Below, one piece after another: positions 1 to 59,090 of a DNA stretch of 64,000 nucleotides. Within the stretch, counting starts at the first letter, position 1. Every line of letters starts with the position of its first letter. Location of the stretch: the NCBI GenBank assembly GCA_053919585.1, contig CM132822.1; one strand, given 5' to 3'. Under the pieces are notes generated by a model. The model made no database searches. It was not told where the DNA came from and saw only the letters and a list, made by a program, of their open reading frames with translations. The position numbers were made by a program, and so were the translations under genes. Source of the DNA: Euprymna scolopes (Eukaryota).

Positions 1-134
1 GGCTGACCTAATGCAAGGTTTTATAAACTGATAGCGAACACGTTTAAAAATGTAAACCACACGTCTTACGTTTAAAGTCAAGAACGTTGTGCAGGAGAAA
101 GGAATGGGGCAAAAGGTACGAAACTCTAGCATTG

Positions 135-205
135 GGTTTGGTGGTTGCTTGGTCTATTGGGCTTCACGACATATCAACCACTGTGGGTCATTTAATGCCA
201 AGCTA
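135..205 (-). mobile_element. Degenerate 3' tail remnant of the same LINE/SINE family
   Basis: gacatatcaaccactgtgggtcatttaatgcc closely matches LINE 47866-47897 and is preceded by a decayed (GGTT)n tract. Confidence 0.6.
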
Positions 206-919: not shown

Positions 920-1230
920 TTGGTTGGTTGTTTTACGGCATATCAACCCATTTCGGGTTATTTAATGTCGAATCCAAAGATTTTAATAGAATATATTGTT
1001 TTCACGTCGGTATTTAACCCATAGTTGGGACCCTAACAGGTACTACCACTCCAGGTCAGAGTGGACCTGGGAGCAATGGTAATTAAAGGGTGGCTCCACA
1101 CTCCAAAGCCCACAAGCTGGGGCCTCACTACTGGATATAGTTTAAGGTCATATCCAGGACCCCCATTGAGGGACTTTTACCCTCTGCAGGGAGGCAGTCG
1201 GCGTATTCTAATGCCCCACCGACAGGGCCA
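920..1230 (-). mobile_element. Short non-autonomous retroelement (SINE-like, family B) with an I/Nimb-type tail
   Basis: 11-bp TSD tcaattatagg (909-919 and 1231-1241). The (CCAA)n tail and ggcatatcaacc..tttaatg motif are shared with the LINE 3' end. The 5' ~70 nt match LINE 53581-53646. Paralogous empty sites lie near 21625 and 35800. Confidence 0.85.
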
Positions 1231-10572: not shown

Positions 10573-10951
10573 GATTGCTTGGTTTTGTTTTATGCCATAT
10601 CAACCCTTTTCAGGCTTTTAATGCTGAATCCAGTTATTTTGGAAATGGGATTCATGTTACAGTTTCTGTAGGTTTTTATACTTCAACCTCCGCGTCATCG
10701 ATCGCTAATTTTAGTGTTTGGTTTGGTGGTTTTATATTTTTAGATCCCTGCCCTGAAAACCATGACTATGTTTGACAATGGGAGATGGAAAAGGGGTATT
10801 GTGTTAATGCTTGGTACATTTTGAGCTAAGAAACCAGTCACGGAAATAGAAAAAGAGAGAATGGGAAGAAGGCAAAGGGGAGAAACGTAGACAAAGCTGC
10901 ATTTCATCTCAGGAAGCCGATATCTTCAGACAGCCTGATCTGTTAACACCA
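10573..10951 (-). mobile_element. Short non-autonomous retroelement (family A) sharing the extreme 5' head and the 3' tail of the LINE
   Basis: 9-bp TSD ggaaagact (10564-10572 and 10952-10960). Tail gccatatcaaccc..tttaatgctgaatcc. Head tttcatctcaggaag..agacagcctgatctg..cacca matches 53830-53874. A paralogous empty site lies near 13700. Confidence 0.8.
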
Positions 10952-12524
10952 GGAAAGACTTTAGAATTGTCTCATTGTTTCTCCCCACTTCTGACTGTAC
11001 TAACCTGCAGAAGTTCAAATGTAAACATCTTGCTGTATAACAGTCTGTTATACACAACCCCAAACAGTGACCCTTATGTTTCATGCTTATATCTTGATTA
11101 GGAAAAAAAAGACAGGTTTGTCAAGACCCTCCTAGATGTGCCTAATGCATATGAATCAAGTTACAAATAACGTAAAGAAATAGGGTTCATGTAAATACAT
11201 TTTTATAACAAAGGACAATAAGCAGAGATTCAAGAACACAAGTAAAAAGTCATCCATGTTTCACAGTTCTCTCACAATGGCACTCAATTAGAAAGCTTTA
11301 AAAGCTCCCTCTGGAGCTGTAAATGAAGTGGTTTGGTTAAGAAAAAAAAAATAGTACGTATTTGAGTCTTACATATGCTAAGCAACGACAAACCTGGCTA
11401 CATGTAAGGAAAAATAAAAACTCAAATGGCATTCTTCTTAAGACCTATAATTTCTTAAATCTCTACATCCGTGGAGTACAGAGCAAAAACATTAACCTCA
11501 TAAAAAATTTTAAAAAACACAAAAGGCAATACAGCTATAATCAAACTCCCGTTAATGCATTACTGCCTCAATAGACACCAAAAACTAATATTCTGATAAA
11601 AGACCATAAAATAATTCTTAAGTCTACAAACACAATGCGATACCCCTCCATAAAGTGATAGTAAATTCGAATGTTGAGTGTTCTCGGCATCGCGCCAGAA
11701 CGTCCAGAAAGCAATCAGCTTTTGATCAAGGCAGTACTTTCATATGGACACCCCTATTTTTTTTTTTTATGGGGAACTGGTTTTCTACCCGATATCTTGA
11801 GGAAACTAAACCAAAATAAACTTTACTGCGGGATTGATATTTGACTTAATTCACTTGTAACTTATTCAGCACGTTTTTTTTTTCGCCTCAAAGATTCGAG
11901 TTTTGTAAGATGCCCCTCTTGTCTTAAAATGAATTTTCGTACTAGCTATACTCAGTAAACTCCATTAAAAACAAAGCAAAAACCGTAAATAGTGATCAGC
12001 GTCTGATTTATTTGTGTGACAGCCACCCCCTTTCCGCTGATGTCAGTACTAGAAGTTAATTGCAGTTCCAAACCATGTTTTTCACCATGTTAAAACTCAG
12101 GAATTGCAAAGACAACTGTTTAAAGTTAGAAGGAAAGGAGAAAAAGGAGGGGAAAAAAAGCTCAAAGATCTGAAATCCTCAACACGTGAAGATAAAATTA
12201 ATGTAAGGTGAAGCTACAAATGCTTAAATTTTTGATGAAAAAGAAAAGGTTATCCTCTTTTCCATGGTGGCAAAAAGCAGAAGCAACTTTCAATTAGTTT
12301 TGTTCAGTTGAATAAACTTTGACCTAAATCTGTCACTAAGGTCAAAGGTGAAAACAAACTGAGCACAGGCCTTATTAAAATGGTAAAACAACATTTTTTA
12401 ATAAGTATGGGTTAAAAATAAAGTAACAATTCTAATGTACAAAAAATCATTTTTTTTTTAATCATTTAACTATCAAGCTGCAGTAAGAAAAGCTTGCACA
12501 TAAGAAAAATCGATATATATATAT

Positions 12525-20259: not shown

Positions 20260-20800
20260 TAACCAAACAACATGAACGAAGGCAGTGAAAAGTAACATTC
20301 AAAACAGAATCAGCAGCTATGTCCCAAAGCCTAGCTGGAGTCCGAACACAGTACCCCCATAATAATAAAGGGTTGGGTTCGAGACTCTTAACAAACCGTT
20401 CCCAGTTCGATACAAAACACCTGATGAAGGCCGGAGGGCAAAACGGCCGAAACGTGACTATAACAACCAAGATGAAGATTGGTTGGTTGGTTGTTTTATG
20501 GCACAACCGTTTTCGGGTTATTTAATGCCGAATCCAAAGATTGAAAAATTTTTCATAGAATATATTTGTTTTCAAATCATTTTCTATTTAACCCATAGTT
20601 GGGACCCTAACAGGTACTACCACTCCGGGTCAGAGTGGAACTGGGAACAATGGTAATTAAAGGGTGGCTCCACACTCCCCAAAGACCGCAAGCTGGGGCC
20701 TCACCACTGGATATAGTTTAAGGTCATATCCTGGACTGAAGATGAGGAAGTCAGTCCGACAATCTCAATAGATAAAAACGCCTCATCTAAAAATAAAATA
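20260..20800 (+). mobile_element. Penelope-like terminal repeat remnant with a hammerhead-like core, interrupted by SINE B
   Basis: 20421-20457 reads ctgatga-aggccg(gagggcaaaa)cggcc-gaaacgtg, i.e. CUGAUGA, stem II, GAAAC. The block is absent from paralogous array units. Confidence 0.6.
20480..20736 (-). mobile_element. 5'-truncated copy of SINE-like family B
   Basis: Colinear with 920-1160. 7-bp TSD tgaagat (20473-20479 and 20737-20743). Confidence 0.85.
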
Positions 20801-30900: not shown

Positions 30901-33304
30901 TGCAAATCAATCATGAACTTCGCGTTCGAATCTAAATTCTACCAATGCTATAATCAATCCCCCAATATATACATAACTGCCACGCTAGACACTGAAGACT
31001 TAGTCATTAACGTTCTGATAAAGACCATAAAAATAATTCTTGAGTCTACAAACAATGCAATAACCAGTCTGGTCAGAAAAACCGATGAAAATGCACAATT
31101 CCAGTTCCCTTAGTTGAATATACTGTTCAAACATTTGACTATTGGTTAGCTTTTATACGACCAAGATAGCATAAATACCTAAAGTATAAAAACAAGGTAA
31201 AAATGAATTTATTACTATACATATTGATATCTGTCGCCTTTAAAAAAAAAGGCCAAAGCAATCAGGAATTTCTAGTTTGAATCTTAAAACTTTGTATCTT
31301 TATCATATCCTCATCCACAAAAACATCATAGAAACCCAATAATAAACGTAACCGCATGGATAGATATGTGCATCCATGTTGTAAAATGCTGGTAGTGGTT
31401 TTTAAAATTTATAAAAAGTTCCTTGCCGTCTTTACTCCAAAATTCCATTAAACAGTAAAATTAAAAAAAATTTTGAATGAAGCAGAACCCACCATGAATG
31501 GAATTTTGAGCTGAAATTTGACATGCGTCATATCCGCATTTTACAAAACAATCATAGAAGCAAAGTAATTAAAGAGAAAACATCCCTTACAGCGCACAGT
31601 ATAAAGTAAAAATTTAAGACGTTTAGAAAATACGTTCTATATAACTCCACGTTGATTTTATTAAAGATGACTTGCTTTTAGTTTATTTTAGACGTTCGGT
31701 TTTTGAATAAGTCCATATGAAGCAGAACCAATCATGAATTTTACGTTTGAATAAAATCTACTAGAGCTATCACGCTATAATCAATCTCTTCAAATACAGA
31801 ACTGTCTCTCTGGACATCGGAAACTTAATCACTAATTTCTGATAATTATTTTTATGGTCTTATTTAGTCTACAAAACTATGCGATACTTCCTCTAGTCAG
31901 AACCCAACACCTCGAAAACTTGTTAAAATACACCACTCAAGTTCGCTGTGTCCACGATAAAGGAAATTGCAAAAGTTGGTTGAAACAGTAGCACCCAAAT
32001 ATAAAAATGTCAGATGAAGATGGACCAATTTGAAGAGCTATTTAGCAGATATTTGTAAGCAACTGGGCCACATGTAAATTTGGATGAAATCAAACCAATA
32101 CCAAAGGTTGTGATTAAACCACATATAGGCATTTGGCAAAGATCTCAAAAATGGGAAAGAGCTGAATAAATTGGTTGTGAGGCTGAATGGTGGCCTCGGA
32201 ACAAGTATGGGATCGGGGTCCCAAAAGTGCCATCCGTCTTGAATGATCTCTAAAAATCCGAAATAGTCATAGAAAGAAAGTTCCTTTTTTTGAATAAGTC
32301 CATATTATAAAAAGGAGGGGACTATATAAAATGAAATATACAAGGAGTAAAAGTAATTGTCAATACCACAAAATTGTAAAATAATTTCGTTTGATGTTAA
32401 AAAAAAAACAGTCTAGGTTTTACACCATGAAAATTACTAATCGCGTTCAAACTGGTAGATAATTCCTTCAAAAATCCGAAATCGTCATAGGAAGAATCAA
32501 TAAATGAATGCAGAGTTCCAGGAAAACCCGTTTTGGATAAGTGCTTGTCAATACCATGCGGGTGAATACCGAAAGATCTGACTTCCTCAACATGTTTAGT
32601 CATACAAAGAAATGGCTGCAAAGAAAACAAGTAAAAGACTTTACACTAGTTTTATAGCAGACAACCACCTTCAATAAGTTCCTGTGGAAATTCTGAAAGT
32701 TGAAAAGGTCACACTGTCTTGGTAAGCAACCGATTCAATATATATATCAGGATAGATGCGGAATATATTCCTACAGCTTTTCCTGATGGAAAGATGCCTA
32801 AATGTAACGGAAACGTTTTGAATAAGAAACTGGTTCCCCTCACTATTAAATCCCAGATAGAGATGGGCCAATTAAAGCTGTTTAGTTGATATTTTAATCT
32901 GCTGAAAATCTGGAAGTTTAAGCCGTCATGGTAAGACGCTGATTCAATATACCTCAGCATAGATGCAGAATACATTTCCTAGAGCGCTTCCTGATTGAAG
33001 TCTGGAAAATGTGAAAGAAACGTTTTTAAGAAACTGGTTCTCGTCATTATTGAATTCCAGATGGAGATGGACCAATTAAAAAAGCTGTTGTGCAGATATT
33101 TGCAAGAAACTGGGTCATCTGTAAAATGGAATAAAAATCAAACAAATCCCAGCTGTGATTAAATCTCATCCAGACATTCAGCAAAGAGCTCAAAAACGTT
33201 AAAGACCTTCTCAATAAATTGATTGTGGTGAAATAGAATTGTAGCCTACGAACACATACGGGTTTTGGAAACGTTTTGTATAAGAAACTGGTTCTTGTCA
33301 CTAT

Positions 33305-46622: not shown

Positions 46623-47975
46623 AGGGGGGAGAGGTGATTGCCTTCCTTGGCAACTTCGATTTCTTTAAGACAGTAGGTACCAAAAGAATTGTAATTTTAT
46701 AGGTAACAAGCCAAGCATGTGGGATCCTTCTTCACGAGGGAAGAACATTTACTCTCGCCATGATTAATGTTTATGCAAAATTTAAAATATAAGGCATGGT
46801 TGAGAAAGTCCGAACAAATGAACGGATGAACAATTTGGGGAAAATTTACCCCTACCATGCCCCTCCCCTCCTACAGGGAGCAATCGGTGTTATCCCGGAA
46901 AATCCGTTCTGGCAAAAAATTTACTCTCACCATGACTAATGATTGTGCAATAGTTGAAAACCTTCAAACAGATATTGAAAAACTGCGAACAATCACAAGT
47001 TAGCCTTATGTGGCAGTATATAAAAGGCAAAATCTGAAACCATTAATTCTTTCGCTGGCCTGCCCAACAGGAAACATCGTTAGTACAACAAGCGTACAAT
47101 GGCTCTCTTATAAACTAGCATTTAAACAAGCATTCTTTGTCATGTGAAAAAAAACAACTCACTCATGCCAACATTAACATTACGCAACCAGATAAGCATT
47201 ATATTAAACGGATACAGTTTTCTGCATATGACTTCAATTTAAATGATTGAAAATAATCAATCTTTCAAGAATTGCAGGAGATCATACACTTCATACAGCG
47301 CATACGTAAAGTGCTTCTTAAAACGCATATTAATGACCTTGATTTGTCTCCGTAAAAAAATAACACCCACAAATCTTCAATGAAGCAGACACAATCATGA
47401 ATTTGAATCAAATCTATCAAAGCTATCCAGCTATAATCAATCTCTTCAAATACGTAACTTCCTCCCTGGACATCGAGAACCTAGTCACTGACGTTCTGAT
47501 AATTATTTTACGGTCTTTTTTAGTCTACAAAAACGATGCAATACTTCCTCCAGTCAGAACCCAACACCTCGAAAACTTGTTAAAATGCACCACTCCAGTT
47601 CGCTGTGTCCACGATACAGGAAATTGCAAAAGTTGGTTGAAACAGTAGCACCCGAAAATAAGAAATGTCATATGAAGATGGACCAATTTAAATAGCTGTT
47701 TAGCAGATATTTGCAAGAAATTGGGCCACCTGTAAATTTGGATAAAATCAAACCAATACCAAAGGATGTGATTAAACCACATGCAGACATTTGGCAAAGA
47801 TCTCAAAAATGTGAAAGAGTTGAAGAAATTGGTTGTGTTTGTTTGTTTGTTTGTTCTGTTTTACGGCATATCAACCACTTTGGGGTCATTTAATGCCGAA
47901 AGGTTCGTTATGTTGTGTTAAATATTGGTTTGTTCTTCTTAAGGTTTTTCTTTTTTTGGGGGGGGGGGTCTTTCC

Positions 47976-50900
47976 TTATATTTTTGAGTATATTTTAGTT
48001 TCTTTCAGAAAATTGATAATTTTTTGGGGATCAATCTTGTTTAATATTGTTTTCAGATTTTTTTCTTGGTAATACTTTGTTCGGATTTGTTCAAGGTCAA
48101 TGCAGTTTGTCAGTATATGGTGTATTGTGTAGGGTTCTTGACACGTTATACAGTTTGGTGTCTCCTCCCCTTTTAGTAGATGTGAGTGGGTGATGTGAGT
48201 GTGACCTATTCGCAGTCTGGTCATTACTACCTCTTCCTTTCTTGTTAACTTTTTGGTGTTTCTCGTTCCAATATTTGGTGTTATTTGGAATAGTTTGTTT
48301 TTGGTGCATGAGCTCCAGTTTTCTTGCCATTTTCTCTTCAAAAATGTGTTTATTTTAGTCTTTAGGTCTGTATAGGGGATTTTTCCACTTATGTGGTTTT
48401 GTTGCAGAGTTTCCTTTGCTGCCTTATCTGCTTGTTCATTCATGTATATGCCGATATGGCTTGGTATCCAGCAAAAGATAATGTTTTTTTTCATGGTTAT
48501 GGCATCTATTTTGTTTAGCAATTTTGTAATAAGTGGGTTTGTCATTTTTTTTTCTTTTAGAGATATGAGTATTGAAAGTGAGTCAGTAAATATGATATAT
48601 TTTTGATGGTCATCATTGGTTATTATATTCAGTGCCGAATCTATGGCTGTTGCTTCTGCGCTGAAAATAGAAGATTCGTTTGGGAGCCTTTTCTTTAGTT
48701 TTATTTTTTTGTGGATGGCTGCGCATCCTACTTTATCTCCATCTTTTGATCCGTCAGTGTAAATTTGTGTATATTCTTTGTATGTATTCTGGATGATAAG
48801 TAGTTCTTCATGGAAGGTTGATGGGTGGGTTTTCGTTTTGGGATATTTATTTAATTTTAATATTATGTGTGGTTGTTTGATCATCCAGGGTGGAGTTTTT
48901 GATTTGTTATATTTATGTATTTTTGTAATGTCCATTTGGGCTTCTGTGAGAAGGTTTTTTATCCGGAGGCTGTAGGGCTTGATGATATTTTCTTTCTTGT
49001 TGAAGAGATGTGTGTATTGTGGGTGGAGGGTACATTGGTATGCAGGATTTGTTGGACACGATACCAGCTTTAGGTAATATTGTAGCGCTAACTTCTGTCG
49101 TCTTAGAATCAGTGGAGGCTCATGGGCCTCTATATAGAGGCTTTCTACTGGAGAGGTTCTAAATGCTCCCAAGGCTAATCTTAATCCTTGATGATGGATT
49201 GTATTTAGTTCTTTTATGTAGGACTTCCTTGCTGCTCCATAGATGAAGCATCCATAGTCCATTTTAGATCTGATTAGGGTTTGGTATAATTTCAATAATG
49301 TGACTTTGTCTGCACCCCAATCGGTGTGTGCTAGGACTTTGATCAATTGCATTGTCTTTTGGCATTTTGCTTTTAAATATTTTATATGCGGTATAAAGTT
49401 CAATTTTTTATCGAATATAATACCTAAATATTTATGTTGGTCGGTGAGTGGGATGTTCTTGTTATCCAGTTTCAGGTTGGGGTCGTGGTGGAATTTTCGT
49501 AATTTGCAAAAGTGGATGCATTTAGTTTTTTCCTCTGAGAATGTAAATCCATTTTCTATGGCCCATTTGTTTATTTTATTCAGACAGAGTTGTAGTTTGC
49601 GTTCGGCTGTTTGTATATATTTAGATTGGTAGTATATAAGTAGGTCGTCCACGTATAGGGCGTTTTCAATTCCTGGGTCTATGTTTTTTATGATATTGTT
49701 TATTTTAATGTTGAAGAGGGTGACAGACAGGATACTGCCTTGGGGGACCCCCATTTCTTGATCTTTTTGGACTGAATAAGTGTTGTCCATCCGTACTTGG
49801 AAGTTTCTATTTGTTAAGAAATTTCTGATAATTTCTGGCATTCTACCCCTAAGTCCTAGTTCATACAGGTCTTTTTGGATTCCGTATTTCCAAGCGGTGT
49901 CATACGCCTTTTGCATGTCAAAAAAAATTGCTATTAGATGTTCTTTTTTTGCAAATGCTTCTCTTATGCGTGTTTCCAGTTTTATTAAGTGATCGGTGGG
50001 GCTTCTATTTTTCCTGAAACCCGACTGGCTTTCTGTAATTAGATTTTTGCTTTCCAAGTACCAATTTAACCTTTCGTTAATCATTCTCTCAAAAGTTTTG
50101 CACAAACAACTAGTTAGTGCAATGGGTCGGTAGTTTGTTGGGTTTGTATGGTCTTTTTTTGGTTTGGGTATTGGGATTACTGTTGCCTGCTTCCAGTTTT
50201 TTGGAATGTTGTTAGTTATCCATATCTCATTGTAAATTTGTAATAAGTAGTCCAGTGATGGTTTTGGTAGTTTTTTGAGGAATTGATAATGGATCTCGTC
50301 GGGGCCGACTGCTGTATCGGGAGATTTGTTTATTGCCTCCTCTAGTTCTGCACTGTTGAATAATTGATTGTAGTTTTCTTCATTTTTTGATTTGAAGTTT
50401 ATTTTTATTTTTTCTTCATTTTTCTTTATAGCTTGGAATTTTTTATTTTGGTTTTTTGATGATGAGTTCATTGAGAATTGTTCTGCTAATTTATTTGCGA
50501 TATTTTGTTTGTCGGTAATCTTTGTGTTGTCGCATATAAGGTGTTTAATAGGGTTCTTTGTATTTTTTCCTGCTATTTTTCTGACCATCTCCCATACTTT
50601 TTTGGGTTTTGTGTTTTGATTAATTTTTGTTACATAGTCTTTCCACGAGTTCCGTTTTGATTCTTTGATAGTTTTCCGTGCTTTGGCTTTGCTGTTTTTA
50701 TAGGTGTCCAAATTTTCTTTCGTTGGACTGTTTTTGAATTTCCTTAGGTTTGCACGTCTGGCTCTTATAGCTTCTTTGCATTCTTTATTGTACCAGGGTT
50801 TGTTATATTTTGTAGTAGTGGAACTTTTTGGTATGTTCTCCTCGGCTATTGTGAGTAGGGTGTTGCTGAAATATGTGATGTGTTCTAAGTCAGGATTCGC

Positions 50901-51647
50901 TTCAGGTATTAATCTGTATTGACATGTATTTTGGAAATTTTCCCAATTTGCCTTTTGTAAATTCCAGCGGGGTGTTTTGTCTTCTGGCTTGGGATTCTCG
51001 TTTTCTATTATGATTGGGAAGTGGTCACTTCCGCATGTATCCTTATGTGTTCTCCAGCTATAATCCATGTATATAGTTGGGTCACATAGTGTTATATCGA
51101 TTGCTGATAGGGTTCCCGTTGGTGGGTGCATATATGTATTCTCTTTGTTGTTGAGTAGGCATAGATCATTTTGGTTAATTATTTTTTCTATGGTTTGGCC
51201 TCTTTTGTTGTTTTTTTTACTGCCCCACCATATATTGTGACTATTGAAGTCTCCCAACAGTAGAAAAGGTTTAGGTAGTTGTTTGATTATATTGTTTAAT
51301 TCTGTTTCGTTTATTGTTTCATTTGGTGGTATATAGAGTGAGCATAGGGTTACTGTTTTGTGTAGTGTTGCAGTTATTGCAACAGCTTGCATATTTGTTT
51401 TTAAGTTCACTTTGCTGTGTGGAATGTTTTCGTTTATCAGTATTGATGATCCACCGGTGGCTTTGCATGATAATTTGTTTATGTGGTTGTATATTGAGTA
51501 GTGTTTTATGTTAATTTTGTCATTTTCTTTTAAGTGTGTTTCCTGTAGGCAAATTATTGCAGGACATAAGGATTTGATAAGTATTTGCATTTCTTCGATA
51601 TTAATTTTTAATCCTCTTATGTTCCACTGTAGGATTTTGTTAGTCAT
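47976..51647 (-). CDS. LINE ORF2: apurinic-like endonuclease, reverse transcriptase, RNase H and C-terminal CCHC (1223 aa)
   Basis: APE motifs QWNIRGL, CLQET, LLGDFNSH and GSDHFPI. RT motifs YRPIALTS, FFDMQKAYD, GVPQGSILS and LYVDD. RNase H motifs IYTDGS, SAEATAI, FTDSLS and WIPSHIGIYMNEQAD. Terminal CITC..TIHHILTNC. Confidence 0.96.
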   Translation of the reverse strand: MTNKILQWNIRGLKINIEEMQILIKSLCPAIICLQETHLKENDKINIKHYSIYNHINKLSCKATGGSSILINENIPHSKVNLKTNMQAVAITATLHKTVTLCSLYIPPNETINETELNNIIKQLPKPFLLLGDFNSHNIWWGSKKNNKRGQTIEKIINQNDLCLLNNKENTYMHPPTGTLSAIDITLCDPTIYMDYSWRTHKDTCGSDHFPIIIENENPKPEDKTPRWNLQKANWENFQNTCQYRLIPEANPDLEHITYFSNTLLTIAEENIPKSSTTTKYNKPWYNKECKEAIRARRANLRKFKNSPTKENLDTYKNSKAKARKTIKESKRNSWKDYVTKINQNTKPKKVWEMVRKIAGKNTKNPIKHLICDNTKITDKQNIANKLAEQFSMNSSSKNQNKKFQAIKKNEEKIKINFKSKNEENYNQLFNSAELEEAINKSPDTAVGPDEIHYQFLKKLPKPSLDYLLQIYNEIWITNNIPKNWKQATVIPIPKPKKDHTNPTNYRPIALTSCLCKTFERMINERLNWYLESKNLITESQSGFRKNRSPTDHLIKLETRIREAFAKKEHLIAIFFDMQKAYDTAWKYGIQKDLYELGLRGRMPEIIRNFLTNRNFQVRMDNTYSVQKDQEMGVPQGSILSVTLFNIKINNIIKNIDPGIENALYVDDLLIYYQSKYIQTAERKLQLCLNKINKWAIENGFTFSEEKTKCIHFCKLRKFHHDPNLKLDNKNIPLTDQHKYLGIIFDKKLNFIPHIKYLKAKCQKTMQLIKVLAHTDWGADKVTLLKLYQTLIRSKMDYGCFIYGAARKSYIKELNTIHHQGLRLALGAFRTSPVESLYIEAHEPPLILRRQKLALQYYLKLVSCPTNPAYQCTLHPQYTHLFNKKENIIKPYSLRIKNLLTEAQMDITKIHKYNKSKTPPWMIKQPHIILKLNKYPKTKTHPSTFHEELLIIQNTYKEYTQIYTDGSKDGDKVGCAAIHKKIKLKKRLPNESSIFSAEATAIDSALNIITNDDHQKYIIFTDSLSILISLKEKKMTNPLITKLLNKIDAITMKKNIIFCWIPSHIGIYMNEQADKAAKETLQQNHISGKIPYTDLKTKINTFLKRKWQENWSSCTKNKLFQITPNIGTRNTKKLTRKEEVVMTRLRIGHTHITHSHLLKGEETPNCITCQEPYTIHHILTNCIDLEQIRTKYYQEKNLKTILNKIDPQKIINFLKETKIYSKI

Positions 51648-53106
51648 GGTTTATATTTTCTTTTGGTTTTGGACTGTTGGTGTTTATGTCTACGTCCATA
51701 GTTTCGATGTTAGTTTGGGTGTTTCTTTTGGAAGTGGATGGTCTGTTTCTTGTTTCTGGTGAGAGGCTTTTTTTGGGTTTTGGTCTGGGACTTTTAGATT
51801 TACTTTGTCTTGACTGTCTTTTTTGGCTACCAGTTTCAACTAGTTCAAATTTATTTTCATTTTCAATTAATACTAATTCTGTTTTTTGTTTGTCATTTTG
51901 TTTTTGGGGGGTAGTTTTTTTGTTGTTCTGTTCTATTTCCATTTTTTCTGTTGTGTGTTTATTTTTAACATCTGTTTTTGTCCTTGTTAGTGACTTGGAT
52001 CTTTCACGTTTTGATAATTGAGGAGGTTTCATTTCTTTAGAGATTGATTCCTCAATATTGATGGAAGTTTTTCTGATTTCCTTTGTTTCGTTTTCTTTTA
52101 TACTGGGTTGTTCGTTTCTGACTTTTATTTGGCTGTTAGAATTTATTTTCAGTTCTGATAAAAAAGATTTTAATTCTTCAAGTATGTTCTTTAGTTCTTT
52201 TGCTAGGTTTGCAATTTCTGGAGCAAGGTTTAGTTCATTGTAGTTGTACATTTTGTTTGCTTGTTGGGTTATTGTGGCATATGAGTTTTTGGTGCGATTT
52301 GTGACTTCTTTGCGGGCTTCTTGGAAGGTTATATTTTTTTGATATTTGATTGTTATTATTTCCTTCTCTTGCTTATATATTTTGCACTGTTTTGAGTGAG
52401 AGTGGTGCTCTTCTTGACAGTTTGTGCATTTGGTTTTATTTGGACAGTCTTCTTCATCGTGGTCTGGGTTTTTTTCACTGCAGTTTCCACATGTGAAGAA
52501 TCTTAGACATTGGTCTTTATTATGTCCAAACTTTTGGCAGTTGTAGCATTGTAAAGGTTTTGGAATGTATTGTTCTATTTTCGTTCTTTCATAACCTATA
52601 TTGATGGTCTCTGGTATTTGAGGATAATTGAATGTTAATATATAAGTGTTTGTATATATTACCTCTCCTTTTTTTTTAAATGTGATTCTTTTTACATCTG
52701 TGACCCCTTGGTTTTTTAGTTCTGTTTTGATTTCTTCTGTTGTGCAGACGGAGATTTCCTGGTTTTTTATGACTCCTTTGGAGTAGTTTAGTGTTTGGTG
52801 TGGATAAGCTTTGATGTTTGTTTCATGCAATTTTTGTAGTTGAAGTAGAGTTTTGGCCTGTTTTTTATTTTGTACTTCTACCAATATGGTACCATTCCTT
52901 AATTTTTTGACATTTTTAGGTGTTATTTTGCTTGATATTACCTTTTGGATAATGAAGGGTGACATTTTAGTTAACGGTATATTAGACGTTGCTTCTAGCA
53001 CGATGAATCTTGGAAAGTTTGTATCTTCATTGTCGCTGTCAGAGTCTATTTCTGTGTGTGGTCTCTTGGATTTTTTGGCATTCATAATAATTTTTGAAAA
53101 ATTCAT
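51640..53106 (-). CDS. LINE ORF1, gag-like nucleic-acid-binding protein with three Cys/His knuckles (488 aa)
   Basis: Motifs SPFIIQKVI..VKKLRNGTILVEV, PHQTLNYSKGVI, then CYNCQKFGHNKDQC, CGNCSEKNPDHDEEDC and CTNCQEEHHSHSKQC, followed by a basic low-complexity tail. The start codon may be the second Met. Confidence 0.92.
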   Translation of the reverse strand: MNFSKIIMNAKKSKRPHTEIDSDSDNEDTNFPRFIVLEATSNIPLTKMSPFIIQKVISSKITPKNVKKLRNGTILVEVQNKKQAKTLLQLQKLHETNIKAYPHQTLNYSKGVIKNQEISVCTTEEIKTELKNQGVTDVKRITFKKKGEVIYTNTYILTFNYPQIPETINIGYERTKIEQYIPKPLQCYNCQKFGHNKDQCLRFFTCGNCSEKNPDHDEEDCPNKTKCTNCQEEHHSHSKQCKIYKQEKEIITIKYQKNITFQEARKEVTNRTKNSYATITQQANKMYNYNELNLAPEIANLAKELKNILEELKSFLSELKINSNSQIKVRNEQPSIKENETKEIRKTSINIEESISKEMKPPQLSKRERSKSLTRTKTDVKNKHTTEKMEIEQNNKKTTPQKQNDKQKTELVLIENENKFELVETGSQKRQSRQSKSKSPRPKPKKSLSPETRNRPSTSKRNTQTNIETMDVDINTNSPKPKENINHD

Positions 53107-53644
53107 CAGCCATGCTCCCCACCCTCCTCGGAGCCCCTTATGGGGAAGAACTATGAGGGGGTAAATCCCATTCGCCTCGGTTCTCCAGGGCTACATAGCT
53201 GGTATACTCAAACATGGGGAGGTTTCCAAGCATTCACAATATATGGTTATGCCCACCCAAGTATGGGATTTCCCTGTATTTTTATTATTCCTGATGGTTA
53301 CCTTTTTCCCAGCTTGATTGACCCTTCAGCCATCGCTTATTAACTCAGTTTATTGTTTATGTTGAGTGTTAGTGTGTTTTTGTTTGGATTGTCTGAATTA
53401 GTGCTTGTCATGACCAACCGATTGATTGGATCGGGCCTATCCAACCTCCCGTCTAGCCTAGTAAGGGCCAAAGTGGTGTGTTGTAGTATCATGTTATTAT
53501 TTCCTAGGCATGTTCCACTCAACCACCAGGATCCCGTTCTTAATGCATTACGGGTTGCCACCAACGGTCAACTGGTGGTCCCATTGAAGGATTTTTACCC
53601 TCTGCAGGGGGGCAGTTGGTATGTTCTATCGCCCTACCAACTAG

Positions 53645-53698
<54 letters not shown>

Positions 53699-54481
53699 GT
53701 GAGGAGGTGAAGGAAAAAGAAAACGAGGGAGGGGAAGGGGAGGAGAATGTTGTTTTTGTTTTTGTTTTCGCAGAACATGACTAAGTTTTGCAAAAGGGAA
53801 TAAAAAAACAAAGACATCTATGTAGGTGCGTTTCATCTCAGGAAGTCAGTAGACAGCCTGATCTGGTAGCACCAGAGAAATTGGTTGTGAAGCTGAATGG
53901 TGGCCTAGAAACAAGTATGGGATGTCGGGGTCCCAAAAGTGCCATCAGTCTTGAATGATCTATTAAATCCGAAAACGTCATAGGAAGAATCACTAAATGA
54001 ATGCAGAGTTCCAGGAAAACACGTTTTGGATAAGTAGTTGTCAATACCATGCGTGTGAATACCCAAAGATCTGACTTCAACATGTTTACTCATACAAAGA
54101 AATGACGGCAAAGAATACAAGTAACAGACTTTACACTAGTTTTATAGTAGACAACCACTTTCAATAAATTCCTGCGGAAATTCTGAAAGTTGAAAAGGTA
54201 TAACTGTCTTGGTAAGCAACTGATTAAATATATCAGGATAGATGCGGAATATATTCCTACAGCGTTTCCTTAAGGAAAGCTGGCTAAATGCAACGGAAAC
54301 GTTTTTAATAAGAAACTGGTTCTCGTTACTATTAAATCCCAGATTGAGTTGGACCAATTAAAGCTATTTAGTAGATATTTTACGCTCCTGCTGAAATTCT
54401 GGAAGTTTAAACTGTCATTGTAAGACTATATATATCAGGATACATGGAGAATACATTCCTAGAGTTTCCCGAGAGAAAGCT

Positions 54482-55255: not shown

Positions 55256-56699
55256 GAACCTCTTCGATAGCCACTAACGTAAGACCTACACAACCAGAAT
55301 TGGAGATAAAACGGAAGACTAGGGAAACTATCGGAGATGGGGGTGGGGGTAGGTGGTTGTCGAATGAGGAGAAGTAGACTGTCTCACATGAATATCTTCA
55401 AAGCTTTTAGCCAAAAAAGCTGACAAACCGATATATTGATTTCAAGCAGCTTAAGATGTTGAAGTGTTGGAAAATCTATACAGAAGTTATTGTGAGAGTT
55501 CCTAATAGGAACCGAAACGGCCGAGAATAAGTTTTGCAAATTTCAAAGCCACCATAAGGATAGAATTGACTATTAATCGACGCTTGCCAATTCATTAAGT
55601 CATTCCGAAATGTTAAGAACTCTGCGGCCATTTACTTTCTGAAGTATAAAAACAAGGTAAAAATAAATTTCTTACTATACATATTGATATCTGTCGCCTA
55701 AACTAAAACGCAAAAGCAATCACGAATTTCACGTTTGAATCTTAAAACTTTGTATCTTTATCATATACTCATCCACAAAAACAATCATAGAAACCCAATA
55801 ATAAACGTAACCGCATGGATGGATACATGTATCAATGTTGTAAAAAACCACAACCAGCATTTTTACATTTGTAAAAATTCCTGTCTTTTACTCTTCAATT
55901 CCATTAAACACTAAAATTAAAAAGCAAATCTTGAATGAAGCAGAACCCACCATGAATTAGGAACTTTACGCTGATTTTTTTTCACATGCGTCATATCTAT
56001 TTACAATCATAGAAACCAAGTGATTAAAGCGAAAACATCAATTACAACAATTAATCTAAGTTTTGCAATTACTAATCACGTTCAAAATAGTTAATGATTC
56101 CTAAAAATCTGAAGTCGTCATAGAAAGAATTACTTAATGAATGCAGAGTTCCAGGAAAAAGAAACTCCTTCCAAGATCTTACTTCCTCTCATGTTTAGGC
56201 ATACAAGGAAATGTCTGCATAGAATAGGAGTAAAAGACTTTATACTAAATTTCTATTAGACAAGCACTTTCAATGAGCACCCACTGAAATTCTGAAAAAA
56301 TAAAGGATAAACTGTCATAGTAAGCGACAGATTCAATCGGTCGAGAGATACAGAGTGCATTCCTACAGCATTTCCTGAAGGAACACATGCCAAACGTTTC
56401 TTTTGCGTTTGGCCAAAGAAACTGGTTCTCGTCACTATTAAATCCCAGATGGAGATTGACCAATTAAATCTGTTCAGTAGATATTTATGTTTAGTGTCCA
56501 TGATGCAGGAATGAATAAATAAAAAAAACATGTCAGATGGATCAATTTAAAGAGCTGCTTAGCAGATATTTGCAAGAAATTGTGACACCTGTAAATTTGG
56601 ATGAAATCCAATCACTATCAAAGGACGTGATTAAACCACATGCAGACATATGGCAAAGATCTCAAAAACGTGAAAGAGTTGAAGAAATTGGATGGGAAG

Positions 56700-59090
56700 C
56701 TGAATGGTTGCCTAGGAACAAGTACGGGATGTCGGGGTCCCAAAAGTGCCATCAGTCTTGAATGATCTCTTAAATCCGAAATCGTCATAGGAAGAATAAC
56801 TAAATGAATGTAGAGTTCCAGGATGACGTTTTGGATAAATGGTTGCCAATATCATGCGGATGAATACCAAAAGATCAGACTTCAACATGTTTAGTCATAC
56901 AAAGAAATGACGGCAAAGAATACAAGTAAAAGACTTTACACTACTTTCCTAGTAGACAACCACTTTCAATAAATTCCTGCGGAAATTCTGAAAGTTGAAA
57001 AAGTCACTGTCTTGGTAAGTGATCGATTCAATAAATATAAGTATAGATGCGGAATATATTCCTACAGCGTTTCCTTAAGGAAAGCTGGCTAAATGCAATG
57101 GAAACTTTTTGCATAAGAAACTGGTTCTCGTTACTATTAAATCCCAGATGGAGATGCACCAATTAAAGCTGTTTAGTAGATTTTAAGCTCCTGCTTCAAT
57201 TCAGGAAGTTTAAACTCATGGTAAGACGCCGATTCGATATATATCAGGATAGATGGAGAATACATTCCTAGATTTTCCTGAGAGAATGCTTGCTAAATGT
57301 ATAAGAAACTGGTTCCCGTCATTATTGAATTCCAAATGGAGATGGACCAATGAAAAAAGCTCTTTTGCATATATTTGCAAGAAACTGGGCATCTGTAAAA
57401 CGGAATAAAATGAAATAAAAGGTTTGATTAAATCCTAATCTGACATTCAGCAAAAATCTCAAATACGTCAGAGACCTCAAATTGGTTGTCTGCAAGCTGA
57501 ATGGTGGCTTAGGAACAAATATGGATGTCGGGGTCCCAAAAGTGCAATCCGTCTTTAAACATCTCATTTCTTGATCTTACCGTCCAATAAATTGAGTATT
57601 TGAAGAGTCCAGATTGACCATTCAGCTTTAGTATGGCCAAGATTGCATAAATACCCAAAGTGATACGAGTATAACACCGATAATTGAGATTTTAAAAATA
57701 TTTTAGTATCCACATTATAAGTGGATTGTCTTAATATGGATCATTAAAATGTACAATGAATCAAAGAAATTGTCAATGTGAATTGATTGCAGATTTATAT
57801 TGTACTAAATTCGAGAATAATTTTATACCATGAAAATGACTAATCACTTTCAAACTGATGGATAATTCATCCTAGATCCGAAATTTTCATCGTAGAATTA
57901 CTAAAATGTAGAGTTATAGGAAATACAGGTTTTGGATTAATGGTTGTCATTACCATGCAGGCGAAAAACTCAAAGGTCTGACTTCAGCAACATGTTTAGA
58001 CATGCAAGGAACTGTGTGCATAGACTAAAAGTAAAAAAAACTACACTAGTAGACAAACACTTTCAATAAATTGCAAAAATTCTCAAAGAATAAAAGTTAA
58101 ACTGTCATGGTAAGCGACTGATTCAATTCATATTAGGATAGATGCAGAATACATTCCTACATTGTTTCTTGACGTAAAGCTGGCTAAATGCAAAGGAAAC
58201 GTTTTGAATATAAAATTGGCTCTCGTCACTAAGTTTCAGATGGAGATGGACCAATTAAAGCTGTTTAGCAGATATTTCATAAGCTCCTGCTGATATTCCG
58301 AAAGTTTAAACTCAAGGTAAGCCACAGATTCAATTATATCAGGATAGATGGAGAATACTTTCCTACAGTATTACCTGAGGGAAAGCTGGCTAAATGCAAG
58401 AGAAACGAAAACCTTATTAAAATGTACCCCTGTAGTTCCTGCTGTCGATTCTAGGGAATTGCAGAAGTTGATTAAGAGAGCAGGACCTGAAAACCAGAAA
58501 AAATGTCAGATGGAGATTGACCAATTTTAAGACTTGTTTAGCAGATATTAGCAAGAAACCAGGCCATCTGTAAATTGGGATAAAAGTAAACCTATTCCAG
58601 GAGATGCGATTTAATCACATACAGACATTCAGCATGGTGCTTTAAACGTGATAACCACAACCAATGTATTGCGGCCTAAGCCAAATAGTGGCCTAGTAAC
58701 AAGTATGGGTTGTTGGAGTTCCCAAAATGCCAGAATGATCTCACGTTTCTTGATCTTACTGTCCAACGAATCGAGTATCTGAAGGATTCAGTTTGACCAT
58801 TGGATGAGCTTTAGTATGGCCAGGATTGTTGCATAAATATCTAAAGTGATGCAAGTATGAAAACAAATGAATAGAAACAGTTTTGAGAGGTACACTTCTG
58901 ACCACCGATGCTTATTACACTAAAACCCGACAAGCGCCAGATATGTCAATATTTTCATAGCAATCGACTATTATGACATTGAAAATTAAATCTTGAAACT
59001 CCCCCTGTTTTGCATTCAGAGTGCTTTTGTCCTATTATGCTGTATGCATCGTGTTTTAGAGCAAAGATCGGCTGTGATGTGAATTCCCAA
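56700..59090 (+). repeat. Higher-order unit duplicated at about 60855-63200 (offset ~4.1 kb); partial paralogs at 42740-43750, 44880-46180 and 53880-54470
   Basis: Same module order and near-identical ORFs (58348 and 62451; 53838 and 60825). Confidence 0.85.
58453..58830 (+). pseudogene. UGP2: UGP pseudogene fragment, duplicated at about 62555-62940
   Basis: ORF 58348-58530 ends RELQKLIKRAGPENQKKCQMEIDQF. Downstream lie GLVTSMGC and [16 protein letters not shown]. A near-identical ORF is at 62451-62633. Confidence 0.8.

What the first reader, a model, noticed from the sequence alone, without database searches (positions are those of the whole stretch)
53581..53646. Covarying tandem pseudoknot shared by the LINE 5'UTR and the 5' end of SINE B
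Seen (sense strand): LINE GCCU-A-GUUGGU-A-GGGC-GAUAGAACAU-ACCAAC-UGC-CCCCCU-GCA-GAGGG versus SINE (1228-1178) GCCC-U-GUCGGU-G-GGGC-AUUAGAAUAC-GCCGAC-UGC-CUCCCU-GCA-GAGGG. The GUUGGU/ACCAAC and GUCGGU/GCCGAC pairings differ by compensatory changes while the linker diverges. A second small knot (UGC/GCA with CCCU/AGGG) follows. SINE B starts within 2 nt of this motif, and in the LINE it follows a ~49-nt U tract. Inference: a structured RNA that defines 5' ends (self-cleavage or an exonuclease block) or aids translation. By eye it does not fit HDV, hammerhead or twister consensus.
Basis: partly seen in the sequence, partly recalled or inferred. Interest (0 to 1): 0.72.

Follow-up and report, generated by a model that had tools for sequence, protein, structure and literature searches.

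The report
Conserved pseudoknot head of a LINE
The flagged 66 bases are the start of a folded RNA module about 270 bases long that heads a family of jumping genes (LINEs) in molluscs and sea spiders and that a short parasitic element (SINE B) has copied; its first pseudoknot is real and conserved, the second is not, and its function is still unknown.

Summary
The quoted sequences are exact (53 of 66 bases identical; CM E = 8.5e-21). The first pseudoknot is real. In 9 distinct sequences from squid, abalone, a sea spider and unidentified assemblies, S1 keeps 4/4 pairs and S2 keeps 6/6. Five of the six S2 pairs vary with compensation. The second knot fails: its AGGG strand belongs to a covarying hairpin (H3).

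The motif is not this LINE's 5' end. An empty-site comparison puts the LINE at 53877-47838 with a 12-bp duplication, so a ~180-nt leader and the T49 tract are internal. In at least two other LINE families, independent copies start 1-2 nt before the pseudoknot, as SINE B does. The motif is the first part of a ~270-nt conserved 5'UTR domain.

SINE B also shares the LINE's 3' hairpin tail, so it is a two-part non-autonomous LINE derivative.

No Rfam family, tRNA, HDV-like, twister or hammerhead features fit. My best reading is a non-catalytic cis-acting head that marks the RNA 5' end and recruits LINE proteins, perhaps overlapping a promoter. A new self-cleaving ribozyme is the main rival.

The scan's earlier notes hold no record of this motif; the sequence look-up was blank, which means nothing.

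The parts
47838..53877 (-). Full-length LINE (about 6040 bp): leader, T tract, ~270-nt structured domain, ORF1, ORF2, 3' tail
   Evidence: Empty-site comparison with uninterrupted copies of the flanking repeat module (for example 56660-56720, 32145-32205). ORFs, Pfam domains.
53878..53889 (.). Target-site duplication AAATTGGTTGTG, 5' side of the LINE (the other copy is at 47826-47837)
   Evidence: Empty sites carry a single copy.
47826..47837 (.). Target-site duplication, 3' side of the LINE
53696..53877 (-). LINE leader (~180 nt, ending in a polypyrimidine stretch). It is homologous to L003:2183-2340 (83%) and partly to L002.
53647..53695 (-). T49 tract (U49 in the RNA) between the leader and the pseudoknot module. 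L003 has T24GT5 at the same place.
53615..53646 (-). Pseudoknot PK1 (H-type). S1 is 53646-53643 with 53634-53631. S2 is 53641-53636 with 53620-53615. L1 is 53642, L2 is 53635, and the A-rich L3 is 53630-53621.
   Evidence: 4/4 and 6/6 pairs in all 9 distinct sequences, with 5 of 6 S2 pairs and 1 of 4 S1 pairs changed on both sides.
53603..53614 (-). Hairpin H2 (UGC / GCA, C-rich loop)
   Evidence: 3-5 bp in all sequences. The stem is lengthened in L012, L013 and L015 and is swapped to AGCA/UGCU in Haliotis.
53586..53602 (-). Hairpin H3 (GAGGG / CCUUC, 7-nt loop).
   Evidence: GAGG/CCUC, GUGG/CCAC, GGUCG/CGACC, GGUC/GACC.
53558..53578 (-). Hairpin H4 (CCACCA / UGGUGG, 9-nt loop GUUNNCCKU)
   Evidence: SINE B has an unrelated 8-bp stem at the same place.
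53385..53646 (-). Whole conserved 5'UTR domain (~262 nt here, ~270-285 in relatives). It comprises PK1, H2, H3, H4, a long irregular arm and two further hairpins.
   Evidence: nhmmer, alignment, RNAalifold.
51640..53106 (-). ORF1, 488 aa, gag-like with one CCHC knuckle
47976..51647 (-). ORF2, 1223 aa: AP endonuclease, reverse transcriptase, RNase H-like domain
47838..47898 (-). LINE 3' tail: hairpin CGGCAU..AUGCCG, then UAAAAC, then an A/C-rich microsatellite. It is shared with SINE B and with L015-17.
920..1230 (-). SINE B (311 nt). The head (PK1 1228-1197, H2, H3, an H4-like hairpin) covers nt 3 to about 105. The body is of unknown origin. The LINE-type 3' hairpin and an (AACC)n tail follow. 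TSD copies are at 1231-1241 and 909-919.

Best explanation
The flagged stretch is the first sub-domain of a ~270-nt structured RNA domain. It holds an H-type pseudoknot (S1 4-5 bp, S2 6 bp, A-rich third loop) followed by two hairpins. The domain heads the RNA of an old group of LINEs with a gag-like ORF1 and an endonuclease/RT/RNase H ORF2. The group occurs in molluscs and chelicerates.

SINE B is a two-part non-autonomous derivative. It keeps the first ~105 nt and the last ~50 nt of such a LINE.

Proposed mechanism: the module is the element's cis-acting 'head'. Sitting 1-2 nt from the RNA 5' end, it folds into a compact pseudoknot. That fold marks and shields the 5' end and is recognised by the LINE's own proteins, while the 3' hairpin recruits the reverse transcriptase. 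At DNA level the module probably overlaps the internal start-site determinant. An RNA carrying head plus tail is therefore copied in trans, which is why the SINE kept both.

Shown here: the fold, its covariation, its position at the 5' ends, the two-part make-up of SINE B, and the phylogenetic spread. Inferred: protein binding, end protection and promoter overlap.

Confidence is about 0.9 for the descriptive part and about 0.45 for the non-catalytic head mechanism.
For: Fold:
- S1 4/4 and S2 6/6 pairs in 9 distinct sequences, with eight different S2 sequence pairs when the Haliotis tandem element is counted, from GUUGGU/ACCAAC to GCAUGG/CCAUGC.
- The nested helices are 91% paired against 80% in shuffles. 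Thirteen pairs changed on both sides against 5.2 expected, with 0/500 shuffles reaching this.
- H2 and H3 hold in all sequences.

Position:
- Flanks of five independent copies from one assembly diverge 2 nt before S1, and L015 versus L016 diverge at the C run.
- SINE B's TSD puts its start 2 nt before S1.

Two-part SINE: head E 8.5e-21; tail 85% identical to the LINE tail; no ORF.

Still selected when internal: the window LINE has its own compensating A-U pairs where L003 has G.U.

Heads look interchangeable: a second non-coding element (10952-10579) carries the leader's 5' end plus the same tail. L002 has the leader but lost S1 and S2a.

Precedents from papers:
- R2 5' RNA directs R2 protein function in second-strand cleavage (PMC2346776).
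- Pr77 is shared by L1Tc and NARTc (PMC1874656, PMC3383444).
- Two-part non-autonomous LINEs are known for RTE, Ingi, Vingi and R2 (PMC5786205).
Against: - No protein-binding, stability or promoter data exist.
- No recognisable Inr/DPE-type motif is conserved in the S2 region, whose sequence changes freely.
- The LINE clades known to make two-part derivatives are largely those with 5' self-cleaving ribozymes (PMC5786205). This raises the prior of the ribozyme rival.
- L002's ORF2 is broken, so its loss of the pseudoknot may only mark a dead copy.
- Only about 7 independent lineages were sampled.
Confidence: 0.45

Rival explanations
1. A new class of self-cleaving ribozyme that cuts just 5' of S1. 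It would release the LINE or SINE RNA from read-through or leader-containing transcripts and so set the 5' end, as HDV-like and twister-variant ribozymes do in other LINEs.
For: - Element copies begin 1-2 nt before the fold.
- SINE B, whose head is closest (91%) to the leader-bearing L003, starts at the module and not at the leader.
- The fold is pseudoknotted with conserved unpaired A-rich nucleotides.
- The 3' half of the domain is nearly invariant, which is core-like.
- Clades with two-part derivatives tend to have 5' ribozymes (PMC5786205).
- Precedents: PMC3185411, PMC8501958.
Against: - No match to any Rfam ribozyme.
- The HDV-like hallmarks are absent.
- Both leader-lineage LINE copies seen (window, with a TSD; and L003) kept the leader. 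Cleavage is therefore at best partial, and a promoter-bearing leader upstream of an efficient ribozyme would not be inherited.
- SINE B keeps only ~105 nt, so a core would have to lie within that.
Confidence: 0.2
2. An exonuclease-resistant structure: 5'-3' decay (Xrn1) stalls at the compact pseudoknot, producing stable RNAs whose 5' end lies at the module.
For: The same 5'-end data. The pseudoknot is compact, with a 1-nt L1 and an A-rich L3. It remains selected when internal.
Against: No resemblance to known xrRNA folds was found. The Rfam scans were negative. Stalling would leave ends a few nt upstream, with some scatter. It was not testable here.
Confidence: 0.1
3. A DNA-level internal promoter only. 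The RNA pairings would be incidental.
For: Heads of non-autonomous elements must carry a promoter. Precise common 5' ends are typical of internal-promoter LINEs (PMC5786205 discussion).
Against: Compensatory changes replace the S2 sequence completely while keeping the pairing, and G.U pairs make the fold strand-specific. A protein-binding DNA site would conserve sequence, not complementarity.
Confidence: 0.07
4. A translation element (IRES-like) for ORF1.
For: The 5'UTR location. A stable structure next to the 5' end would hinder cap-dependent scanning. HDV-like ribozymes are reported to promote translation initiation (title of Ruminski et al. 2011, as cited in PMC5786205; the paper itself was not read here).
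Against: The non-coding SINE B keeps exactly this part and drops most of the rest. The role is more plausible for the downstream ~170 nt of the domain.
Confidence: 0.05
5. A degenerate tRNA-derived Pol III head (ordinary SINE2).
For: S1 with its loop looks like a D arm by eye. H3 has a 7-nt loop. There is no T4 run in SINE B.
Against: - ARAGORN found nothing.
- No Rfam tRNA hit at E<=10.
- A- and B-box matches are poor and misplaced.
- The same module heads 6-kb LINEs that Pol III could not transcribe.
- S2 and H3 change sequence freely.
Confidence: 0.03

Closest known systems
Pr77 / L1TcRz hallmark of L1Tc, NARTc, ingi/RIME (trypanosomatid ingi-clade LINEs)
   Same: A 5'-terminal module of about 70-77 nt shared by an autonomous LINE (endonuclease/RT/RNase H type) and its non-coding partner, with a pseudoknotted RNA fold at the exact 5' end (PMC1874656, PMC3185411, PMC3383444).
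   Different: No sequence similarity to the Pr77 sequence printed in PMC1874656. The fold is a simple H-type pseudoknot without P3/L3, P1.1, P4 or a conserved catalytic C. Promoter and cleavage activities are untested here. The hosts are molluscs and chelicerates.
R2 5' RNA (5' protein-binding RNA with pseudoknot)
   Same: A structured, pseudoknot-containing RNA near the 5' end of a LINE that acts in cis on the element's own protein (PMC2346776). R2 also gives non-autonomous derivatives that keep both ends (PMC3414825).
   Different: R2 is a single-ORF, restriction-like-endonuclease, site-specific element. There is no sequence or fold homology, and binding is not shown here.
HDV-like and twister-variant ribozymes at LINE 5' ends (R2, RTE, Baggins, Perere-3)
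   Same: A pseudoknotted RNA at the 5' edge of the element, with element copies starting at the fold (PMC3774820, PMC8501958).
   Different: The defining cores are absent, there is no Rfam hit, and cleavage is untested.
Two-part (5' + 3') non-autonomous LINE derivatives: RIME, NARTc, Vingi-derived elements, SINE2-1_AMi with Vingi-2_Gav nt 2-74
   Same: SINE B is LINE head plus LINE tail, non-coding, with a TSD (PMC5786205).
   Different: SINE B has a ~150-nt body of unknown origin. Homology of its head with the Vingi 5' end could not be tested because no Repbase sequences were available.
Classical H-type pseudoknots with a 1-nt loop 1 and an A-rich loop 3 (phage T2 gene 32, MMTV frameshift site; from my own knowledge)
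   Same: The stem and loop lengths fit this geometry.
   Different: Those act in translation control. This one sits at an RNA 5' end.

Membership tests
HDV-like self-cleaving ribozyme | P1 (6-7 bp) starts at the cleavage site, and its 3' strand follows a P3 hairpin (nested double pseudoknot) | tested here: not met
   The first 4-5 nt pair with nt 13-17. Only S2a plus 1-2 nt lie between the two strands, so there is no room for P2a and P3/L3.
HDV-like self-cleaving ribozyme | P3/L3, P1.1 and a conserved catalytic C in J4/2 | tested here: not met
   L2 is 1-2 nt. L3 (for example AUAGAAUAU or AGAUAAUAU) has no conserved C.
HDV-like self-cleaving ribozyme | Match to the Rfam HDV-type models | tested here: not met
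   cmscan at E<=10 and E<=5 on the window and four homologous loci gave no ribozyme hit. These models are known to be insensitive.
Twister / T-variant, hammerhead, pistol, hatchet | Conserved core nucleotides and helices as in the Rfam models | tested here: not met
   No hit. The twister layout in PMC8501958 Table 1 does not map onto the helices. For pistol there is no P2 partner for L3 (judged by eye).
Any self-cleaving ribozyme | Site-specific self-scission | not testable with these tools
   Needs in vitro transcription or cleavage assays. RNA reads were unavailable.
tRNA-derived SINE head (SINE2) | tRNA cloverleaf and A/B boxes at the proper spacing | tested here: not met
   ARAGORN found 0. 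No Rfam tRNA hit. The best A-box-like match is at nt 1 and the best B-box-like match is far downstream, near the 3' end, each with 2 mismatches.
Two-part non-autonomous LINE derivative | 5' end homologous to the LINE 5' region | tested here: met
Two-part non-autonomous LINE derivative | 3' end homologous to the LINE 3' tail | tested here: met
   85% over 54 nt, including the hairpin
Two-part non-autonomous LINE derivative | Non-coding, with a target-site duplication | tested here: met
   The longest stop-free stretch is 64 aa. The TSD is 11 bp.
H-type RNA pseudoknot | Two stems in the order S1a-S2a-S1b-S2b, both supported by covariation | tested here: met
   S1 rests on one G:C to C:G swap (3 of 9 sequences) and one U.G to C:G change. 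The rival cloverleaf pairing is broken in L012 and Nymphon.
Pr77 hallmark | Sequence similarity to the 77-nt signature | tested here: not met
   By eye, comparison with the sequence printed in PMC1874656 shows only a shared CCCUG start.
Exonuclease-resistant RNA (xrRNA) | Xrn1 stalling; ring-like fold around the 5' end | not testable with these tools
   No Rfam xrRNA hit. The fold class cannot be judged from secondary structure alone.

The most novel reading that the evidence does not exclude
The module is a new class of small RNA that sets RNA 5' ends by its own chemistry or mechanics. It would be either a self-cleaving ribozyme cutting just upstream of S1 or an exonuclease-proof cap substitute. 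It has been conserved in LINEs from molluscs to chelicerates and has been hijacked by SINEs.
Probability: 0.25. Interest if true: 0.85.

Novelty: new variant of a known kind. Interest (0 to 1): 0.58.

Why it matters
How LINEs define and protect their 5' ends, and how non-autonomous elements get recognised, is known for only a few clades: HDV-like ribozymes, twister variants, R2 5' RNA and Pr77.

Here is an uncatalogued fold with very clean covariation, and far better conserved than the proteins behind it (ORF1 is 39-50% identical). It sits at the RNA 5' end in several LINE families, and a SINE has taken it over together with the 3' tail.

This gives a compact, testable cis-element of about 105 nt for LINE/SINE recognition. 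It also leaves a realistic chance of a new ribozyme or exonuclease-block class.

For annotation, it shows that some mollusc 'SINEs' are headed by LINE 5' modules rather than by small-RNA genes.

Tried and rejected
- Viral-contig scan with a 17-mer gave 7 chance hits in phage genes.
- Two metagenome scans found nothing real. A 21-mer from the motif gave 0 hits; a gapped pattern from the conserved 3' half gave 1 GC-rich chance hit.
- Rfam at gathering and E-value thresholds on the window, SINE B and four homologous loci gave only lncRNA, miRNA and snoRNA noise.
- ARAGORN found no tRNA.
- Single-sequence folding z-scores were unremarkable (-0.3 to -0.8). Comparative data, not folding energy, carry the case.
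- Long-range pairing of ACCAAC/GCCGAC with a downstream UCGGY segment (RNAalifold) is rejected. Haliotis changes S2b to UUCCAC while that segment stays the same.
- A cloverleaf closing stem (CCC with the G run after H3) is disfavoured. It is broken in L012 (GAGG) and Nymphon (GAUGG), and it does not explain the C16/G16 swap.
- HDV-like mapping with S2 as P1 and GGGC pairing to the domain's 3' GCCC is rejected. L015's G16 is compensated by C1, not by the 3' segment.
- Partial look-alikes to 5S rRNA and to twister by eye are not colinear and have no Rfam support.
- The beetle locus L023 has no domain.
- MAFFT alignments put S1b out of register. The S1/S2 counts were therefore made on coordinates and segment lengths in a script.
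- The earlier-findings search by sequence was blank.

Full report
**1. The observation**

They are 53/66 identical without gaps. Of the 13 differences, five lie in stems and all keep pairing: one double change in S2, and U:A to U.G, U.G to C:G and G.U to G:C. The other eight lie in loops or linkers.

The match is far beyond chance:
- A 15-mer shared by the two sites has 0.16 expected matches in the window.
- BLAST gives E 8e-12.
- nhmmer gives E 7.5e-16.
- The covariance model gives 76 bits, E 8.5e-21.

The A run on the plus strand is 53647-53695, 49 nt.

**2. Where the elements begin and end**

The LINE lies on the minus strand.
- ORF1 is 53106-51640, with one CCHC knuckle.
- ORF2 is 51647-47976, with AP endonuclease, RT and an RNase H-like domain.

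The LINE sits inside one unit of the repeat family that fills this window. Uninterrupted units serve as empty sites. They place the insert at 53877-47838, with a 12-bp duplication AAATTGGTTGTG at 47826-47837 and 53878-53889. The T49 tract and a ~180-nt leader upstream of it are therefore part of the LINE, and the motif starts at about nt 232.

A second LINE on an unidentified ENA assembly (L003) confirms this. Its ORF1 is only 42% identical. It nevertheless has the same leader (83% identical), a T24GT5 tract and then the motif.

SINE B has an 11-bp duplication and spans 1230-920. It begins two bases (UG) before the motif.

SINE B also shares the LINE's 3' tail: the hairpin CGGCAU..AUGCCG, then UAAAAC, then a short A/C-rich repeat. 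It has no ORF and no T4 run. It is therefore a two-part (head plus tail) non-autonomous derivative with a ~150-nt body of unknown origin.

**3. A larger conserved domain**

I fetched contigs that encode ORF1 relatives. The motif turned out to be the first ~70 nt of a 5'UTR domain of about 270 nt. The domain lies upstream of ORF1 in the following loci:
- L003, L011, L012, L013, L018 and L019 (two copies in L019).
- L015, L016 and L017 (Tara and other metagenome assemblies).
- Haliotis cracherodii (L020).
- Nymphon striatum (L021).
- Araneus ventricosus (L022), in reduced form.

ORF1 identity among these loci is 39-50%. The 3' half of the domain is nearly invariant from squid to abalone. A beetle locus showed nothing.

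**4. The fold**

A covariance model built from 12 sequences realigned all copies. On that alignment the four nested helices (S2, H2, H3, H4) behave as follows:
- They are 91% paired, against 80% in column shuffles.
- Thirteen pairs changed on both sides, against 5.2 expected; 0 of 500 shuffles reached this.
- Sliding the 3' partners by 1-3 columns drops pairing to 27-56%.

S2 is 100% paired.

I then extracted the segments by coordinates for nine distinct sequences.
- S1 keeps 4/4 pairs in every sequence.
- S2 keeps 6/6 pairs in every sequence.
- Seven different S2 sequence pairs occur among these nine sequences, and a Haliotis tandem element adds an eighth (GGGGAC/GUCCCC). They are GUUGGU/ACCAAC, GUCGGU/GCCGAC, GUUGGU/GCCGAC, GUCGGC/GUCGAC, GUCGGU/ACCGAC, GUGGAA/UUCCAC (abalone), GCAUGG/CCAUGC (sea spider) and that element.
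- Five of the six S2 pairs vary with compensation.
- S1 swaps its outer pair G:C to C:G in three sequences: L015, abalone and sea spider.

Shuffling whole 3' strands among the sequences reaches the observed pairing in 60/20000 trials for S2 and 239/20000 for S1. These sequences are related, so the figures are not probabilities.

Several G.U pairs make the fold specific to the sense strand.

The segment lengths are conserved: L1 is 1-2 nt, L2 is 1-2 nt, and L3 is 8-12 nt, A/U-rich, with an AGAAU-like core. From my own knowledge of such folds, this fits a classical H-type pseudoknot.

RNAalifold cannot draw pseudoknots. It instead closes a cloverleaf by pairing the 5' CCC with the G run after H3. 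That pairing is broken in L012 and in Nymphon, and it leaves the position-16 swap unexplained. I therefore prefer the pseudoknot but cannot exclude an alternative state.

An earlier long-range alternative for S2b is refuted by Haliotis.

**5. The second knot**

It drops to 1-3/4 in the other six sequences.

The AGGG strand belongs to hairpin H3, which is kept everywhere with compensatory changes: GAGGG/CCUUC, GAGG/CCUC, GUGG/CCAC, GGUCG/CGACC and GGUC/GACC. H2 is also kept. It is lengthened in some families and swapped to AGCA/UGCU in abalone.

After the pseudoknot there are therefore two plain hairpins, followed by H4. SINE B has an unrelated 8-bp stem at the H4 position.

**6. Link with 5' ends**

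Five independent copies in one assembly (L011, L013, L018 and two in L019) have unrelated upstream flanks that converge 2 nt before S1. L015/L017 and L016 encode the same ORF1 protein, and their flanks diverge at the C run. SINE B starts 2 nt before S1.

In at least two LINE families, and in the SINE, the pseudoknot therefore sits 1-2 nt from the element's 5' end.

The window LINE and L003 are the exception, with the leader and T tract in front. Even so, the window LINE has turned two G.U pairs (the state seen in L003) into A-U pairs, so the pseudoknot is still under selection when internal.

L002 is a leader-bearing Tara contig with a broken ORF2. It has lost S1 and S2a but keeps the domain from H4 onward.

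A second non-coding element in the window (10952-10579) carries the leader's first ~55 nt and the same kind of tail. The leader and the pseudoknot module thus behave as interchangeable heads.

**7. What it is not**

- No Rfam family matches the window, SINE B or four homologous loci.
- No tRNA was found, and the A/B-box matches are poor and misplaced.
- HDV-like ribozymes need P1 starting at the cut, P3/L3, P1.1 and a catalytic C. Here only S2a and 1-2 nt lie between the two S1 strands, and L3 has no conserved C.
- The Pr77 sequence of L1Tc (PMC1874656) is not similar.
- The twister layout (PMC8501958) does not map onto these helices.

**8. How it probably works**

The covariation shows selection on the RNA. 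The SINE's choice of exactly head plus tail points to a cis function in propagation, not in translation. My best reading, at about 0.45, is a non-catalytic head. It would be a compact 5'-terminal pseudoknot that marks and shields the RNA end and is bound by the LINE's proteins, probably overlapping the start-site determinant at DNA level. Two precedents are the R2 5' RNA, which directs R2 protein function (PMC2346776), and Pr77, which L1Tc shares with NARTc (PMC1874656, PMC3383444).

The main rival, at about 0.2, is a new self-cleaving ribozyme that cuts just before S1.
- For it: the clades known to make two-part derivatives are largely those with 5' ribozymes (PMC5786205).
- Against it: both leader-lineage LINE copies seen kept the leader, so cleavage cannot be efficient and obligatory.

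The remaining rivals are an exonuclease stall (0.1), a DNA-only promoter (0.07), a translation element (0.05) and a tRNA-type head (0.03).

**9. Limits**

- Only about seven independent lineages were available.
- The organisms behind the ENA contigs are unknown.
- The LINE clade (I/Ingi-like by domain order) was not determined by a tree.
- Earlier notes of this scan identified the genome as a squid. They describe a different structured LINE 5'UTR (s1-279901) and hold no record of this motif. The sequence look-up was blank, which means nothing.

Noticed in passing
window 10579-10952 (minus strand): A non-coding element of about 370 nt. It starts with the LINE leader's first ~55 nt (78% identical), continues with a polypyrimidine stretch, and ends with the LINE-type 3' hairpin and an A/C-rich tail. 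It is a second, leader-headed two-part derivative.
   Followed up: partly
window 20478-20736 (minus strand): A second SINE B copy (86% identical), 5'-truncated at about nt 70 so that it starts in hairpin H4. It has its own short target-site duplication.
   Followed up: partly
window 47838-47898; SINE B about 920-960; L015:5850-5920: The LINE 3' tail (hairpin CGGCAU..AUGCCG, then U(A/U)AAAC, then a family-specific microsatellite) is conserved across LINE families whose ORF1 proteins are under 50% identical to the window's. This is presumably the RT recognition site.
   Followed up: partly
window 53647-53877 (minus strand); L003:2183-2404: The leader, a ~50-nt polypyrimidine run and a pure T tract (T49 here, T24GT5 in L003) sit directly before a complete 5' module. 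The origin and role of the T tract are unexplained.
   Followed up: partly
L020:17170-17357 (minus strand), Haliotis cracherodii: Tandem units of about 150 nt, each holding a cut-down version of the module (S2 GGGGAC/GUCCCC, H2, H3) without S1b. This is a satellite- or SINE-like reuse of the head.
   Followed up: no
L011:971-2602: Five tandem 75-aa ORF calls with a 351-nt period lie between the conserved domain (46-330) and ORF1 (3001). It may be a tandem-repeat expansion inside a LINE 5'UTR or a nested element.
   Followed up: no
window 53385-53480 (minus strand) and homologues: The 3' half of the domain (blocks such as CACCACUUUGGCCCUUAC and AAUCGGCUGGUCA) is almost invariant from squid to abalone and sea spider. 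That is much more conservation than helices alone require. Kojima 2018 (PMC5786205) reports an RTE/Ceph-SINE-like block at 243-310 of the Aplysia Ingi-3_AC 5'UTR, which might be the same thing.
   Followed up: no
window 131-199: Another LINE-type 3' tail (77% identical to the LINE tail) lies near the window start.
   Followed up: no
window 53353-53784 (plus strand): A 143-aa TTG-start ORF runs antisense to the LINE 5'UTR and through the A49 run. It is almost certainly spurious.
   Followed up: no
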